A DNA stretch of 63,744 nucleotides, filler included, from Octopus bimaculoides (GCF_001194135.2; 4 parts of 4 records of this genome joined end to end with filler, not necessarily neighbours in it), one strand, 5' to 3'; positions 872 through 25,090 are shown, counted from the whole stretch's first letter. The notes: generated from the sequence alone by a model not told the origin. Program-made: numbers and translations.

Positions 872-933
872 GTTCAACGTGAATTTTACCTTCTTTCTCA
901 TCATCATGGGAATATTAATGACTGTAGCCGCAG
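872..933 (+). pseudogene. Secreted Cys-rich peptide gene, copy A, signal-peptide exon (start codon GTG instead of ATG)
   Basis: ttttacag|gttcaac GTG AAT TTT...GCC GCA G|gtaaga encodes (V)NFTFFLIIMGILMTVAA. Near-identical to the copy C exon at 22798-22865, and the downstream intron is homologous. Confidence 0.85.
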
Positions 934-1899
934 GTAAGAAATCCATTATCCCATTCTTTAAATGATTTTTCGAACCTAGTTTAATCACACATATCATGAA
1001 TAATGTTACATACAAGTTGCAGAAATTTCATTATCATCAGTGACCAACTCTCAAGAGAATTACTGCCCATTGTATCCTAATATCTATGAACACTTTTCAC
1101 GCGAAAACGTTTTACTAACAAATTCCCTGTATATTGCATTCCTTTTATAGATAGAAATCTCTCGTTATTTTCCTTAACCAGTCTCCGGTCCAGTCTGTTC
1201 TCCTCTCCATGTCTTCTCCAACAGAACACATATCGACTCTCACTTCAAACACCTCTGTCTCAACAATAACATCGTAAACTTATTCTACTTCAATTCATTC
1301 CACTCTATTCCACTATGTTCATATGCTCTTTCCTTTCACCGGACGAAATCTCACAGTCACAGGCTCTTTTAGCTTGCATCTAGTTTTTAATAAAAAAACT
1401 ACCAGGATATCTCACGGTATGTCAGAGGAACGAGTTCAATTCTTGGGCGAAATTTCACCAGAAATAAAACTTCAAAACATAATGCGGAAAAATAAACTAA
1501 TGGTATCTAAGAATACAATGAAAACAGTATACCTAGAACTGAACCTATGGATGTATGTTCACGCACGAATCTACAGACACACATGCATACACCTATGTAT
1601 ACACATTTACTAACCAATGATTTGTTCTCTATTTCATCCATCTCAGAAATAGGGAACCACGATATGCCTCCTCTGATTAATTGCAAATCAATGTTTATGG
1701 CGTTCTCCATTTCATGACCCTAAAAAGTGCAGTTCATTGCTTCATTAAACTTCAATTATTTTGTTTTACATAAAACTTTGGAATCTCCTCATTAAGGTTC
1801 CGAGCATCGGTAGATATACGTTATTAAGAAAGTCTCCACCATTTTATCATTAAATTAAAATAAAGCAAGACCTTTCCTAAGAAAGATAAAGATCTAGGA

Positions 1900-2358
1900 T
1901 TTTAACATGCTGATAAATGGTATGAACATGAACCTAGTAAAGTACTAAGAAGTAAGAAATATCAAATACTGTGAGATTGAACGTTAAGACTAACATATTA
2001 CTAGAAGCTAGAAGGCCTGATTTAGTAGTAATAAAACAGAATAGAAAGTGCCAGATAATTGCCTTTACTGTTTCAAATGATTAGAAAATCAATATGAGAG
2101 TTATAGAGGAAATAGGAAAGTACCAGGACCGAGTCATTGAATTACAGAGACTTTGGAAAGTGCAGATAAAATGAACCGGTGGATAGGGGAAATATGCTTA
2201 AAACCCGGATTAGTAGATCTCCAAAAATCAGTGTTATTAGAGACAGCTAGGATACTTAGGAGGGTTCTTGGCATCTAAGGTTATTTGTTCGTGCCCGATG
2301 TTAGGATTCTTTCTTTCCCTAACGGTTTAACCTGTTGTGAATAAAATAATAATAATAA
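1900..2358 (+). mobile_element. 3' end of non-LTR retrotransposon with restriction-like endonuclease (R4/Dong-like), decayed
   Basis: RPDLVVIKQNRKCQII...KYQD...LQRLWK...LQKSVLLETARILRRVLGI* followed by an (AAT)n tail. Confidence 0.8.
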
Positions 2359-2359
2359 T

Positions 2360-2570
2360 TCTTTCTACTATAAACACAAGGCCTGGAATTTGATGGAAGG
2401 TGGATAGTCGATCGCATTGACCCCAGTTACTTGACTGGTACTTAATTTATTCACTCCGAAAGGATGAAATGAAAAGGCAACCTCGGCGGAATTTGAACTC
2501 AGCACATAGCAGCAAACGAAATACTGCTAAGCATTTCGCCCAGCGTGCTATCGATTCTGCCAGCTCTACG
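2360..2570 (-). mobile_element. SINE family A (aaggcggcgagctggcagaa... head)
   Basis: Reverse complement of the dispersed repeat also found at 10884, 12400, 27408, 34690, 52912 and 58545. Confidence 0.8.
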
Positions 2571-2607
2571 ATTTTAAAATAATAACAACAACAACAACAA
2601 CAACAAC

Positions 2608-2639
<32 letters not shown>

Positions 2640-2671
2640 TAATAATATGATGATGATGATGATGATGACGG

Positions 2672-3613
2672 AAGACTATCCTAATGCCCAAATCCACTGA
2701 AACGGCAAACCCACACAATTACAGACCAATAACTTGTCTCCGTGCAATTTACAAAACCGTTACTGCAATAATATCGCAGAGAATGAACAAACATCTGGAA
2801 GAAAATAACCTGCTGCCAGAAGAGTAGAAGGGATGCTGCAAGAGCTCATACGGTTCATGCTGATCAATAAAACCATAACCGAAGACAGCCACAGGAAGAA
2901 GAAAGTTCTAATTATGGCCTGGATCGATTACCGAAATGATTTTGATAGTATTCCCCACACATGAATCTTAGAAACATTAGCCATGAACAAGGTAGCACCA
3001 ATAATCATAAAATATATAAAACATTCCTTGAATAAATGGTAGGCAGTTCTACAGCTCCAGATAAAAGAGGAACTAATAAAAACCACAGCCATCCCCATTA
3101 GAAGAGGAATATTCCAGGGAGATACACTCTCTCCACTCATTTTCTTCTTGACACTGGCGCCTTTATCTGACATGCTAAACAGAACTGGACGTGTATACGA
3201 CTGTTACGGCAAAACAATCAGCCACCTCTTACATATGGATGATCTAAAATTGTACGCTACAGAAGATAAACAGATGGAAACATTACTACAGACAGTACAT
3301 GGATTTACCAACGAAATAAATATGAAATTTGGATTAGAAAACCCTTGAAAAGAGGAAAACTAGTTAAGAGTAGCAACATCACACTAGATAAATCAAATTA
3401 AATAAGAGAATTAGATGAAAGCTAGATATACAAATACGTAGGAATCAATGAACTAGATACGATACAGTACACAAATGAAAGAGAAGGTAAGAAAAGAAAA
3501 CTATAGAGGAGTTACATTAATACTAAAAACAGAGCTCAATGTGAAAAACAAGTTAATAGGTATCAAGACACTAGTCGTCCCAATTATAAGTTACAGCTAC
3601 AATATTCTTAATT
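2672..3613 (+). mobile_element. RLE-type LINE reverse transcriptase, 5' part (decayed)
   Basis: WIDYRNDFDSIPH, IRRGIFQGDTLSPLIFF, ISHLLHMDDLKLYA and INMKFGL RT motifs, with stops and frameshifts. Confidence 0.9.
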
Positions 3614-23039: not shown

Positions 23040-23626
23040 TCAGAAATCATATTTATTTTTTACGTCCAAATGATTTTGAACGCTGCGGAATAAATGATAA
23101 TCAGATGGGGCAATGTCAGGTGAATATGGTGGGTGGGGTAACGTTTCCCATTCAAACTGCTCCAGCTTTTGAAATGTCATCTTCGCTGTATTTGGCCGAG
23201 CATTATCCTGATGGAAGAACATCTTTCGTCTTGAAACCAAAGATGGTCGTTTTTCTTCTATCGCTAACTTAAGCCGCTCAAGCTGCTCGCAGTAGATCTC
23301 CTATGTTATCGTTTGGTTTGGGTTTAAAAGTTCAAAGTGGACTAAATCTTTCATACCCCACCAAACAGATAACAACATGAAGAACTTCTTTAGCCTGAGG
23401 TGCCAGTGTTTCTCTCTTCCCTATTCACTGTCTTCGGTGCCCTGACATTTTTGTAGAGTACATATTTCTCGTCAACAATCACTATTCAGTCAAAACAAGT
23501 TAATTCGTGAGACGTGGCCGCAAAGAAGCGCAACACTTCACATTATGCACAGAGTTCAAATTTATCATTTTTGGAAGTTTCCCCCAGATGTTTATTTTCT
23601 GGTTCTCTAAACTCAAGAGATTACAA

Positions 23627-23661
<35 letters not shown>

Positions 23662-24573
23662 AACCCTGAGTTTAAAATAATGCATGGTTCAATTTTTATA
23701 GCTCTTTAAATTCGGCCAATTTAACGAAATTTCCTTTTTTTTTTTTAGTATCCTAACATTGAACATATTTTCGTTCACAAAAAGATTTTAGACCTCTCTT
23801 TGAACTTATTTAGAAGCGTTGTTTATTGTCTTTCAGTCAAGCTACAGGCTGGAATGCATAGGCCAACATAAATTTGAGAGAATTGGGGATGCATGAAAAT
23901 ATCCAAATTTTGGGTAAAACACCTTCAAACTTGATAATCTAAAAACAAAATACAAATTTTGACATATTAAGGGCTAACATATTTGTCCTCCTCAACATTT
24001 TATGTAAACTCTGGGAAAAAATCATTTGAAAGGGGTTAAAAGGCCACGCAGAACGAATTATTCCAGATTGGGTGCCAAACATCAAAACGAAACAAAATTG
24101 GGTAAAATTGGTAGTTATTGACCCCCCCCCCAACGTGATTAAACAAGTATAGAAACAGGAAATATAAAATGGACTTAAAACCTAATAAATTTTTTGAAAT
24201 AATTGATCTTAAATATACTTCTTTTGGTATATAACTTATTTTATACAGTAAAGATTGGGTTGGGAAGGTCACGCTTATTGTCCGATCCCCATATACTGCA
24301 TTAATATTCCTCGCACTTTCCGTTGCGTTGTTGCCTTTATTGAACTCATGAAGCAAAATATTCTGCATATGCTCCTTTGTCACTTCCATTATAACTTTGA
24401 AAAAAATAACCATTAAACTCGAACTGCACTCTTCAAAACTTGCACTAAGAATAAGCACGAGGCAAAAGTACTACCTGCTTTTACAACAAGTTGATGCAAG
24501 GAGTTTATCCCGAACCCCTCCGACTTTTATTTCATCCAATTGAAAAAACTGCATTGTTTGTATGATGACTCAA
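23040..24573 (-). mobile_element. Internally deleted mariner (second family) with ~0.8 kb foreign insert, in intron 2 of copy C
   Basis: MEVTKEHMQNILLHEFNKGNNATESARNINAVYGDRTISV and FHQDNARP...HPPYSPDIAPSDYHLFRS. TIR ttgagtcatcatacaaacaatgc is related to the 36.2-37.1 kb copy. Confidence 0.9.
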
Positions 24574-24782
24574 TATTTACATTATGTCTATATCACAACG
24601 ATATATCGTTGTTTGTAAATTGCTTAATGGTTGTCATGCAAATTGTAAAATAAATTAAAAGAATTAAAATCATAAAGATTTAAAAAAATTAATATCATGA
24701 AGATTGGACTAACTGAGTTTTTGTCGTCCAAAACAACAATAAAATTGTGAATAATGGGTGAAAGACATACATAGATATATAG

Positions 24783-24829
24783 AAAATTGCGGAAAACGAA
24801 GGCCACATTGGACGTTGATCTATGTAGCA
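24783..24829 (+). CDS. Copy C middle exon, shortened: (E)NCGKRRPHWTLIYVA
   Basis: tatatag|AA AAT TGC GGA AAA CGA AGG CCA CAT TGG ACG TTG ATC TAT GTA GCA|gtaaga. Codon-aligned with copy B, with synonymous differences. Ends in phase 0, unlike B. Confidence 0.55.
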
Positions 24830-24944
24830 GTAAGAGATGAAGCGAATGATAAGTAGCTTTGATATCAATATGATGTATCTTTATATTCATTTTTTAAAAT
24901 ATCAAAATGGCATTAAGGCAACTTTTATTATGTTCTAATTTTAG

Positions 24945-25057
24945 GCGATTATTCGGCATGTCGTGCGATTTGCCAGAAACAACATCTGCCAGGTGGAAAG
25001 GGTAATGATCACGCTGCTTTTTTTCAGTGTCTCCAACAGAAATGTCAATGTATGTAA
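24945..25057 (+). CDS. Copy C terminal exon (G)DYSACRAICQKQHLPGGKGNDHAAFFQCLQQKCQCM*
   Basis: ttctaattttag|gc acceptor. Open frame to TAA 25055-25057 with CxxxC-x18-C-x4-CxC. Confidence 0.85.
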
Positions 25058-25075
25058 ATTGTGTACAGATCAGTG

Positions 25076-25090
25076 AATAAAATCAATAAA
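25076..25090 (+). terminator. Tandem polyadenylation signals (AATAAA x2) of copy C
   Basis: gAATAAAatcAATAAA; conserved in B, and in A with the first signal mutated. Confidence 0.7.

What the first reader, a model, noticed from the sequence alone, without database searches (positions are those of the whole stretch)
872..25090. Unannotated tandem cluster of three paralogous genes for a small secreted cysteine-rich peptide
Seen: three + strand blocks share, in the same order, a signal-peptide exon (872-933, 13464-13526, 22798-22865), homologous intron starts, a middle exon (6687-6710 remnant, 15327-15428, 24783-24829), a terminal Cys exon (6834-6940, 15527-15615, 24945-25057) and a conserved 3' UTR with AATAAA. 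B and C also share a promoter region. None of this appears as a spliced product in the ORF track. Inference: a lineage-specific family of ~90-aa secreted disulfide-rich peptides evolving by birth-and-death. That organisation is typical of venom, antimicrobial or pheromone peptide families. I cannot assign it to a named family.
Basis: partly seen in the sequence, partly recalled or inferred. Interest (0 to 1): 0.85.

Follow-up and report, generated by a model that had tools for sequence, protein, structure and literature searches.

The report
Octopus helical-hairpin secreted peptide gene cluster

Summary
The three paralogous + strand blocks are real (self-BLAST E 1e-31 to 1e-62). The gene model needs correcting. 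The signal exon (phase 1) splices directly to the Cys exon (phase 1).

Only C is intact. A has GTG in place of ATG. B has two GT-to-AT donors, a 15-nt deletion that removes Cys2, and Cys4 changed to Ser.

Searches of 1.8 and 5.8 billion proteins found three relatives. All are mis-modelled "hypothetical predicted proteins" of Octopus vulgaris, from a tandem cluster with at least 7 signal exons on OX597816.1. Those are 8-Cys double helical hairpins. The window copies lack about 78 nt and keep one hairpin (CX3C-X18-CX4C).

In both clusters the mature exon diverges faster than the flanking intron and 3' flank (p about 1e-5), while the cysteines are kept. This suggests diversifying selection.

There is no Pfam, PDB or literature match. 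Expression and function were not tested. This is a new family of a familiar kind and is moderately interesting.

The parts
18108..18487 (+). Copy C upstream element. It contains a TATATAAG box at about 18386-18393, inside a 17-bp tandem duplication. The inferred non-coding leader exon ends at 18454 (CTACTG|GTAAGC). The element ends at assembly gap 18488-19263.
   Evidence: 73% identical to B's element. About 70% identical to elements upstream of four O. vulgaris signal exons. The alignment shows the conserved TATA box and GTAAG donor. The P0001 model starts inside the homologous O. vulgaris element. The transcription start is inferred, not shown.
22798..22865 (+). Copy C signal exon. Acceptor ttacag|GTTCAAC; ATG at 22805; encodes MNFTFFLIILGILMILALTE; donor AAG|gtaaga, phase 1.
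   Evidence: The same exon, with the conserved AGGTTCAACATGAAT context, occurs in seven O. vulgaris copies.
22866..24944 (+). Copy C intron (2079 nt). It carries a minus-strand mariner remnant at about 23054-24576.
   Evidence: HTH_48 of Mos1-type transposase at 24036-24458(-). The stretch is 75-81% identical to a mariner copy in O. vulgaris. Including 24783-24829 breaks the frame.
24945..25057 (+). Copy C mature-peptide exon. Acceptor ttttag, phase 1; encodes (G)DYSACRAICQKQHLPGGKGNDHAAFFQCLQQKCQCM followed by a stop. Cys pattern CX3C-X18-CX4C-X-C.
   Evidence: AlphaFold2 predicts helix-loop-helix at pLDDT 72.
25058..25300 (+). Copy C 3' UTR and conserved 3' flank. AATAAA at 25076 and 25085.
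   Evidence: 77-81% identical to the flanks of A and B, and 73-77% identical to the 3' UTRs of O. vulgaris m6 and m1.
10413..10770 (+). Copy B upstream element. It has TATATAAG at about 10677-10684. Its leader donor is mutated to AT (TACAG|ataac at 10718/10719).
13464..13526 (+). Copy B signal exon (ATG 13466; MKSIFFLIILGIFLMISLTE). The donor is AT instead of GT, and the acceptor region is altered.
15527..15615 (+). Copy B mature exon: GRAQCQYVQLSENPEDYSYFNKCVQDRS followed by a stop. A 15-nt deletion removes Cys2, and Cys4 is replaced by Ser. B is a pseudogene.
872..933 (+). Copy A signal exon. It has GTG at 879-881 where the others have ATG, and it is two codons shorter. The GT donor is intact. 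No leader element was found in 1-871.
6834..6940 (+). Copy A mature exon: (G)TKSQCRQDCLIEHLNSESRHRFDYFIKCFNDKCR followed by a stop. Cys pattern CX3C-X18-CX4C; the open reading frame is intact.
934..6833 (+). Copy A intron, swollen to 5900 nt. Only 934-1389 and 6694-6833 are ancestral. The rest is inserted repeats: a + strand LINE at about 2650-6656, a nested 2-kb insert with a Tc1-like HTH, and the assembly gap 3614-3870.
6941..7503 (+). Copy A 3' UTR and conserved 3' flank (AATAAA at 6973).
15616..16190 (+). Copy B 3' UTR and conserved 3' flank (AATAAA at 15657 and 15666).

Best explanation
The window is a tandem array of three copies of an octopod gene family that has not been described.

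Gene structure. Each gene has three exons:
- a very short non-coding leader behind a TATA box;
- a signal-peptide exon;
- one exon that carries the whole mature peptide, the stop codon and the poly(A) signal.

Copy C is the only intact copy. It would give a 57-aa precursor. The roughly 20-residue signal peptide would be cleaved on entry to the secretory pathway. The 36-residue product would fold as two antiparallel helices held by two disulfides (CX3C on helix 1 against CX4C on helix 2), and it would be secreted. Copies A and B are decaying.

Origin of the short form. The Octopus vulgaris relatives are twice as long: two such hairpins in tandem, with 8 Cys. The window copies descend from a ~78-nt deletion. 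It runs from the fifth Cys codon to the old stop codon and left exactly one self-contained hairpin.

Likely role. The mature exon changes faster than the neighbouring intron and 3' flank while the cysteines stay. I therefore infer that the peptide acts outside the cell on a co-evolving target. The most likely role is as a defence or attack effector (antimicrobial or salivary toxin). A reproductive or chemical signal is less likely.

Shown: paralogy, exon phases, the lesions, the relatives, and the rate contrast.
Inferred: signal cleavage, disulfide pairing, the transcription start, secretion and function.
For: - Paralogy.
- In-frame two-coding-exon product, and failure of the middle exon.
- Relatives: an exhaustive HMMER profile search of 1.84e9 proteins found only P0001 and P0002 (E 2.5e-4 and 7.6e-4). 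A 9-member profile then gave P0001 at 1.2e-34 and P0003 at 1.4e-22. All three are O. vulgaris proteins on OX597816.1.
- Independent support from non-coding homology: the introns, 3' UTRs and upstream element match the O. vulgaris locus with E down to 1e-89.
- O. vulgaris models join '...ALTE' directly to 'AGEV/AGEL...' in a single mature exon. That 99-kb region holds at least 7 signal exons and at least 7 mature exons, with introns of about 1.9 kb.
- Leader element with TATATAAG and a GTAAG donor.
- The 78-nt deletion is shared by A, B, C and O. vulgaris m7.
- AlphaFold2: C gives helix, a PGGKG loop, helix (pLDDT 72). The long form gives four helices arranged as two hairpins (pLDDT 78).
- Rates in the window, C versus A: signal exon 87%, intron 70-73.5%, mature CDS 55%, 3' flank 77.5% (Fisher p = 4e-5).
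- Rates in O. vulgaris, s5/m4 versus s4/m3: signal 98.5%, intron 96-97%, mature CDS 88.9%, 3' UTR 97.3% (p = 1.3e-5). The pair m2/m4 has 15 non-synonymous and 0 synonymous differences.
- All four Cys are kept between A and C although only 10 of 34 residues are identical. The chance of that is about 0.0014.
Against: - No transcript, proteomic or activity evidence was reachable.
- The 57-aa product, and even its signal-peptide words, are absent from 5.8e9 database proteins.
- Two of three copies are broken. C has an odd fifth Cys and a 17-bp duplication in its TATA region. The link from its leader to its signal exon crosses an assembly gap.
- dN/dS for A versus C is about 1.2 on only 34 codons. 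On its own this is compatible with neutrality.
- The first HMMER E-values were marginal.
- All three O. vulgaris models are chimeric, so they do not prove normal expression. That annotation mixes transcripts with ab initio prediction (PMC10700109).
- Foldseek found no significant structural neighbour.
- Signal cleavage could not be scored.
Confidence: 0.65

Rival explanations
1. The whole window cluster is a dead array. On this view the ~78-nt deletion was a disabling truncation of the 8-Cys gene, and A, B and C are all pseudogene relics. C merely has not yet picked up a stop codon.
For: - A lacks an ATG.
- B has five lesions.
- The only short-form copy seen in O. vulgaris (m7) has lost three of its four cysteines and has no detectable signal exon.
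- C's last two codons come from a secondary deletion in the old 3' UTR.
- dN/dS is about 1.2.
- There is no database protein for any short form.
Against: - A pseudogene should drift at the rate of its flanks. Here the mature exon diverged about twice as fast as the intron and 3' flank on both sides (p = 4e-5).
- The four Cys codons and the exact X3/X18/X4 spacing survived between A and C (chance about 0.0014).
- The short form went through two duplications.
- C keeps its ATG, both splice sites, matching phases, its stop codon and AATAAA.
- The truncation leaves an even, self-contained four-Cys module.
Confidence: 0.25
2. One reading: three coding exons (signal, middle, Cys) giving a ~90-aa precursor.
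For: - The region around the proposed middle exon is conserved among copies and with O. vulgaris.
- In A, the 24-nt 'remnant' happens to stay in frame.
Against: - In C the 47-nt exon shifts the last exon out of the Cys frame.
- In B it carries three in-frame stops.
- Its conservation is no higher than that of the surrounding intron.
- The O. vulgaris models splice the signal exon directly to the Cys exon.
- No frame-preserving internal exon with good splice sites exists in C's intron.
Confidence: 0.03
3. The blocks are pieces of a repeated mobile element or other non-genic repeat, not genes.
For: - The window is full of transposon debris.
- The blocks recur many times in the O. vulgaris region.
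Against: - Copies always occur as an ordered leader / signal / ~2-kb intron / Cys-exon unit inside one tandem cluster.
- They carry conserved splice sites, phases and cysteines.
- They have no transposase or RT similarity.
- The profile hits nothing else in 1.84e9 proteins.
Confidence: 0.02

Closest known systems
Octopus vulgaris 'hypothetical predicted proteins' P0001 (113 aa), P0002 (186 aa) and P0003 (116 aa), from GCA_951406725.2, chromosome OX597816.1, 70.17-70.27 Mb
   Same: - Homologous signal exon, including the AGGTTCAACATGAAT context.
- Phase-1 intron of about 2 kb.
- Mature exon starting CX3C-X18-CX4C-X-C.
- Homologous intron ends, 3' UTR (m1/m6 type) and upstream TATA/leader element.
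- Tandem clustering, and a fast-evolving mature exon.
   Different: - The O. vulgaris members are 60-65-residue, 8-Cys double hairpins. The window copies lack about 78 nt and keep one hairpin with 4-5 Cys.
- Nucleotide identity is only 62-81% across the gene blocks, so this is a paralogous cluster or another species.
- All three database models are chimeric: one has a wrong-frame first exon, one lacks the signal exon, and one has run-on exons.
Plant alpha-hairpinins (antimicrobial or trypsin-inhibiting peptides; motif C1X3C2X4-20C3X3C4, helix-loop-helix, two disulfides; PMC11591084, PMC7191063)
   Same: - Four Cys in two close pairs on two predicted antiparallel helices.
- Precursors can carry several hairpin modules in tandem, as in the O. 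vulgaris double-hairpin form.
- Cysteines are almost the only conserved residues.
   Different: - No sequence homology.
- Animal rather than plant.
- The second pair in the window peptides is CX4C, not CX3C.
- The precursor is a signal peptide plus one peptide from its own exon, not a vicilin-type or multi-module cassette.
- Activity is unknown.
Cystine-stabilised alpha/alpha (CS-alpha/alpha) venom peptides such as scorpion kappa-KTx (PMC11722136, abstract)
   Same: Small secreted two-helix peptide braced by two disulfides, from a predator that uses saliva as venom, with a hypervariable mature region.
   Different: - No homology.
- The loop is longer: 18 residues between the two Cys pairs.
- There is no evidence of salivary-gland expression or ion-channel activity.
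- Disulfide pairing is not determined.

Membership tests
Octopus vulgaris P0001/P0002/P0003 family (unnamed) | Detectable protein homology over signal and mature parts | tested here: met
   The short-form profile hits P0001 and P0002 at E 2.5e-4 and 7.6e-4 in 1.84e9 proteins, with no other hits. The joint profile gives 1.2e-34 and 1.4e-22.
Octopus vulgaris P0001/P0002/P0003 family (unnamed) | Same gene architecture: leader element, signal exon with phase-1 donor, ~2-kb intron, single mature exon | tested here: met
   The non-coding blocks align with E down to 1e-89.
Octopus vulgaris P0001/P0002/P0003 family (unnamed) | Eight-Cys double-hairpin mature peptide | tested here: not met
   The window copies and O. 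vulgaris m7 lack about 78 nt and end after Cys4 or Cys5. They form a truncated subfamily.
alpha-hairpinins | Cys motif C1X3C2X4-20C3X3C4 (PMC11591084) | tested here: not met
   The window peptides are CX3C-X18-CX4C. Only the second hairpin of the O. vulgaris long form (CX3C-X15-CX3C) fits the motif.
alpha-hairpinins | Helix-loop-helix fold with two disulfides | tested here: inconclusive
   AlphaFold2 predicts helix-loop-helix at pLDDT 72-78 from very shallow alignments. Disulfide pairing cannot be read from the output.
alpha-hairpinins | Sequence relationship to known members, or antimicrobial or protease-inhibitor activity | tested here: not met
   No Pfam hit and no PDB sequence hit. Activity is not testable here.
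CS-alpha/alpha venom peptides (kappa-KTx type) | Two helices cross-linked C1-C4 and C2-C3; venom-gland expression; potassium-channel or insecticidal activity | not testable with these tools
   Only the predicted secondary structure agrees. Foldseek against the PDB gave nothing below E = 4.8.
Any curated protein domain or solved structure | Significant profile or fold match | tested here: not met
Transposable element coding sequence | Similarity to transposase, RT or other mobile-element proteins; dispersed copies | tested here: not met
   The peptide exons hit no such family. The true mobile-element pieces in the window lie in introns and spacers.

The most novel reading that the evidence does not exclude
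An octopod-specific, so far undescribed class of secreted helical-hairpin peptides exists in single- and double-hairpin forms. It is organised in tandem arrays, and its mature exon is under diversifying selection while the introns stay nearly identical. It is a working effector family: salivary toxin, mucosal antimicrobial or chemical signal. The single-hairpin form was created in one step, by a microhomology deletion that fused the fifth Cys codon to the old stop codon.
Probability: 0.45. Interest if true: 0.65.

Novelty: new variant of a known kind. Interest (0 to 1): 0.5.

Why it matters
- Cephalopod secreted peptides are poorly catalogued because small multi-exon genes escape annotation. 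The only three database entries for this family are mis-built models with no name.
- A corrected gene model (leader, signal exon, one mature exon) and a profile make the family findable in other cephalopod genomes and transcriptomes.
- The contrast between near-identical introns and a divergent mature exon is the signature seen in toxin, antimicrobial and reproductive peptide families. The family is therefore a reasonable candidate for bioactive-peptide work.
- It is also a clean example of how a two-module peptide can become a one-module peptide by a single deletion.
- The window itself contributes one possibly live gene and two decaying ones.

Tried and rejected
- Word-indexed search with the 57-aa C precursor found nothing.
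- Exact look-up of ten window ORFs, to identify the source genome, found none in the collection. The species stays unknown. The TE and gene-block similarity to O. vulgaris (62-88%) only says it is an octopod or close.
- Rfam and tRNA scans of the window gave no hits.
- Enumerating frame-preserving internal exons in the introns gave none with acceptable splice sites in C, and only TE-derived ones in A and B.
- Immediate upstream regions of the signal exons share only microsatellites and the acceptor tract. A 'TATTTATAAA' just before the signal exon was considered as a TATA box. I rejected it because a start about 30 nt downstream would fall after the ATG, and because the O. vulgaris P0001 model uses that site as a splice acceptor.
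- Pfam, PDB sequence and Foldseek PDB searches gave no significant match.
- Literature searches for the peptide motifs and for octopus salivary or secreted Cys-rich peptides found nothing describing this family.
- Two alignments of the short-versus-long indel (C-terminal versus internal) were compared. They reconcile as one deletion from the Cys5 codon to the old stop, between AATG and ATGA.

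
Full report
**1. Observation**

A self-comparison of bases 1-25896 shows three + strand units that share two blocks in the same order.
- The 5' block is A 862-1389, B 13467-14010 and C 22788-23040, at 70-75% identity.
- The 3' block is A 6694-7252, B 15412-15948 and C 24859-25300, at 68-80% identity.
- E-values run from 1e-31 to 1e-62, so this is far beyond chance.

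- A and C have AG/GT borders.
- Each copy has an AATAAA 20-35 nt after its stop codon.

**2. Assembly gaps (tested first, as asked)**

No coding frame of these genes crosses a gap.

Gap 3614-3870 lies in A's intron, inside a + strand LINE.
- RVT_1 lies left of the gap and zf-RVT right of it.
- Against an O. vulgaris copy of the same LINE, window 3029-3611 and 5690-5990 match adjacent stretches (17346-16766 and 16758-16464 in my joined coordinates).
- The LINE is therefore colinear across the gap plus a ~2-kb nested insert, which includes a Tc1-like HTH. This supports the scaffold.

Gaps 17255-17751 and 18488-19263 are each bordered by (TA)n on both sides. They are breaks in microsatellites.
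- The third gap starts 33 bp after C's leader donor.
- The leader-to-signal-exon link of C therefore rests on order and orientation only.

**3. Gene model**

The signal exon ends in phase 1 and the Cys exon begins in phase 1, so they join in frame.
- C: MNFTFFLIILGILMILALTEGDYSACRAICQKQHLPGGKGNDHAAFFQCLQQKCQCM, 57 aa.
- A: VNFTFF...AAGTKSQCRQDCLIEHLNSESRHRFDYFIKCFNDKCR.
- B: MKSIFF...TEGGRAQCQYVQLSENPEDYSYFNKCVQDRS.

- In C it is 47 nt and throws the last exon out of the Cys frame.
- In B it has three in-frame stops.
- It is no better conserved than the surrounding intron.
- A scan for any frame-keeping internal exon with usable splice sites found none in C.

**4. Relatives**

The word-indexed search with the 57-aa product found nothing.

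An exhaustive HMMER profile search of 1.84 billion representatives found exactly two proteins: P0001 (E 2.5e-4) and P0002 (E 7.6e-4). A nine-member profile later gave P0001 at 1.2e-34 and a third protein, P0003, at 1.4e-22.

All three are 'Hypothetical predicted protein [Octopus vulgaris]' on chromosome OX597816.1 of GCA_951406725.2, at 70.17-70.27 Mb.

Their exons map as a signal exon joined directly to a single mature exon: '...ALTE|AGEVECPFDC...' in P0001 and '...ALTE|AGELACRYDC...' in P0002. This confirms the two-coding-exon structure.

All three models are chimeric.
- P0001 starts at an ATG in a leader exon. It then reads one paralogue's signal exon in the wrong frame, and then splices into the next paralogue's signal exon.
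- P0003 lacks the signal exon.
- P0002 runs on into distant exons.

The annotation behind these models merged Iso-Seq, RNA-seq, protein alignments and ab initio calls (PMC10700109). The models therefore do not prove normal expression.

The 99-kb O. vulgaris region holds at least 7 signal exons and at least 7 mature exons, on both strands, with introns of about 1.9 kb.

Homology to the window extends through intron ends, 3' UTRs and upstream elements, with E down to 1e-89. This backs the marginal first protein E-values.

**5. Leader exon and promoter**

A ~250-bp element lies 0.3-3.4 kb upstream of four O. vulgaris signal exons. It is also present in the window at 18108-18487 (upstream of C) and 10413-10770 (upstream of B).

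The alignment shows a conserved TATATAAG, then about 45 nt later a donor CTG|GTAAGT.

The P0001 model begins inside this element. The signal exon is entered through the conserved acceptor ttttacag|GTTCAAC.

- In C, the TATA region carries a 17-bp tandem duplication.
- In B, the leader donor is AT.
- A has no such element in the 871 bases available upstream.

**6. State of the three copies**

- C has its ATG (22805), both donors, both acceptors, an open frame, a stop codon and AATAAA.
- A has GTG for ATG. The next in-frame ATG would leave only 9 signal-peptide residues (MGILMTVAA) before the exon junction. A also has a 5.9-kb intron full of inserted repeats, although its mature exon is intact with four Cys.
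- B has AT for GT at both donors, an altered acceptor, a 15-nt deletion that removes Cys2, and Cys4 changed to Ser.

That makes one candidate live gene and two decaying ones. The birth-and-death picture holds.

**7. Short versus long form**

O. vulgaris mature peptides are 60-65 residues with eight Cys: C1X3C2-X13/18-C3X4C4-X-C5X3C6-X15-C7X3C8.

AlphaFold2 gives four helices (2-16, 23-33, 35-44 and 50-58) at pLDDT 78. That is two helix-loop-helix hairpins in tandem.

The window copies and one O. vulgaris relic (m7) lack about 78 nt. Nucleotide alignments place the loss from the Cys5 codon to the old stop, between AATG and ATGA. Exactly the first hairpin remains, with spacings X3, X18 and X4 identical to the long form.

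C's fifth Cys and final Met arise from a secondary small deletion in the former 3' UTR.

AlphaFold2 on the C precursor gives a helix, a PGGKG loop and a helix at pLDDT 72.

**8. Rates**

Window, C versus A:

| Segment | Identity |
|---|---|
| Signal exon | 87% |
| Intron | 70-73.5% |
| Mature CDS | 55% |
| 3' flank | 77.5% |

The mature exon differs from its flanks at p = 4e-5.

O. vulgaris, s5/m4 versus s4/m3:

| Segment | Identity |
|---|---|
| Signal exon | 98.5% |
| Intron | 96-97% |
| Mature CDS | 88.9% |
| 3' UTR | 97.3% |

Here p = 1.3e-5. The pair m2/m4 shows 15 non-synonymous and no synonymous changes.

Between A and C only 10 of 34 residues match, yet all four Cys and their spacing are kept. 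The rough chance of that is 0.0014.

A neutral relic would drift at the rate of its flanks. An exon that is faster than both flanks while keeping its cysteines points to diversifying selection on a disulfide scaffold.

Caveats:
- The samples are tiny.
- dN/dS for A versus C (1.18) is not by itself different from 1.
- Gene conversion of flanks could add to the contrast. In the pair s6/m5 versus s7/m6 the 3' UTRs are of different types, so recombination is clearly at work there.

**9. What it resembles**

There is no Pfam domain, no PDB sequence relative and no significant Foldseek neighbour. No paper prints these motifs.

By design it resembles cystine-stapled helical hairpins.
- Plant alpha-hairpinins have the motif C1X3C2X4-20C3X3C4 and sometimes multi-module precursors (PMC11591084, PMC7191063).
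- CS-alpha/alpha venom peptides are the other example (PMC11722136).

It is not a member of either group. There is no homology, and the window hairpin has CX4C where the alpha-hairpinin motif needs CX3C.

**10. Verdict**

The exon model and the peptide length were wrong.

Function is inferred only from architecture and rate pattern. My best guess is an extracellular effector against a co-evolving target, in defence or attack. The main rival is that this particular cluster is a dead, truncated offshoot (0.25).

Noticed in passing
window 132-262 and 1392-1522: A 131-bp direct repeat that is 100% identical brackets exon A1. The second copy begins exactly where A/B intron homology ends (1389). It is part of an ORF (159-569) that continues only after the first copy. 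It is either a very recent duplication or an assembly artefact, and it weakens confidence in the local order around A's 5' half.
   Followed up: partly
window 1-570: ORFs 20-235 and 159-569 look like a retroelement protease/pol fragment (DTDSD motif). Pfam gave no hit, and the PDB gave only a retroviral protease at E = 0.5, so this is unconfirmed.
   Followed up: partly
window 2650-6656: A + strand LINE sits inside A's intron. It has RVT_1 (E 4e-15) and a weak zf-RVT, and is 76-85% identical to LINE copies in the O. vulgaris locus. It is interrupted at 3612-5689 by a nested insert that contains the assembly gap and a Tc1-like HTH (HTH_23, E 4e-7).
   Followed up: yes
window 21438-21825 (+) and 23054-24576 (-): Two mariner-type remnants: Transposase_1 at E 2e-17, and HTH_48 at E 2e-10. 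The second sits inside C's intron and is 75-81% identical to a copy in the O. vulgaris region.
   Followed up: partly
window 10744-10884: A ~135-bp element has at least five copies, on both strands, in the 99-kb O. vulgaris region at 80-88% identity. It is probably a SINE or MITE. ARAGORN found no tRNA and Rfam found nothing.
   Followed up: no
window 2415-2564, 10883-11045, 12400-12542: A second ~150-bp short repeat family is present in three copies (73-83% identity, mixed orientation). It is also present in the O. vulgaris region.
   Followed up: no
window 9315-9932 and 25557-25895: There are two long ORFs without a Pfam hit. The first is 205 aa and is Cys-containing (CCSGGKVKLP). The second runs into the piece's edge; it had no PDB match, and from memory it resembles the start of a LINE endonuclease. 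Both are probably transposon debris.
   Followed up: partly
L001/L002 (O. vulgaris OX597816.1:70170356-70269349): All three annotated genes of this family are mis-modelled. P0001 chains a leader ATG, one paralogue's signal exon read out of frame, and the next paralogue's signal and mature exons. P0003 lacks the signal exon. P0002 runs on for 40 kb. At least four further copies are unannotated.
   Followed up: yes
L001, about 32800-33240 (joined-region coordinates 95480-95930, minus strand): O. vulgaris has a lone short-form mature exon (GVKVKYRHYYMKIHLQNGDPGDCTEFLKCLYDHRQ) with the same 78-nt deletion as the window copies. It has lost three of the four cysteines, and no signal exon was found nearby. 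It lies at the edge of the fetched region, so more short-form copies may lie beyond.
   Followed up: partly
window 820-854, 13303-13443, 22600-22700: Each signal exon is immediately preceded by a different simple repeat: (TATC)n, (ACAT)n or an ATT-rich tract. Intron 0 next to the acceptor has therefore been replaced by microsatellites independently in each copy.
   Followed up: no
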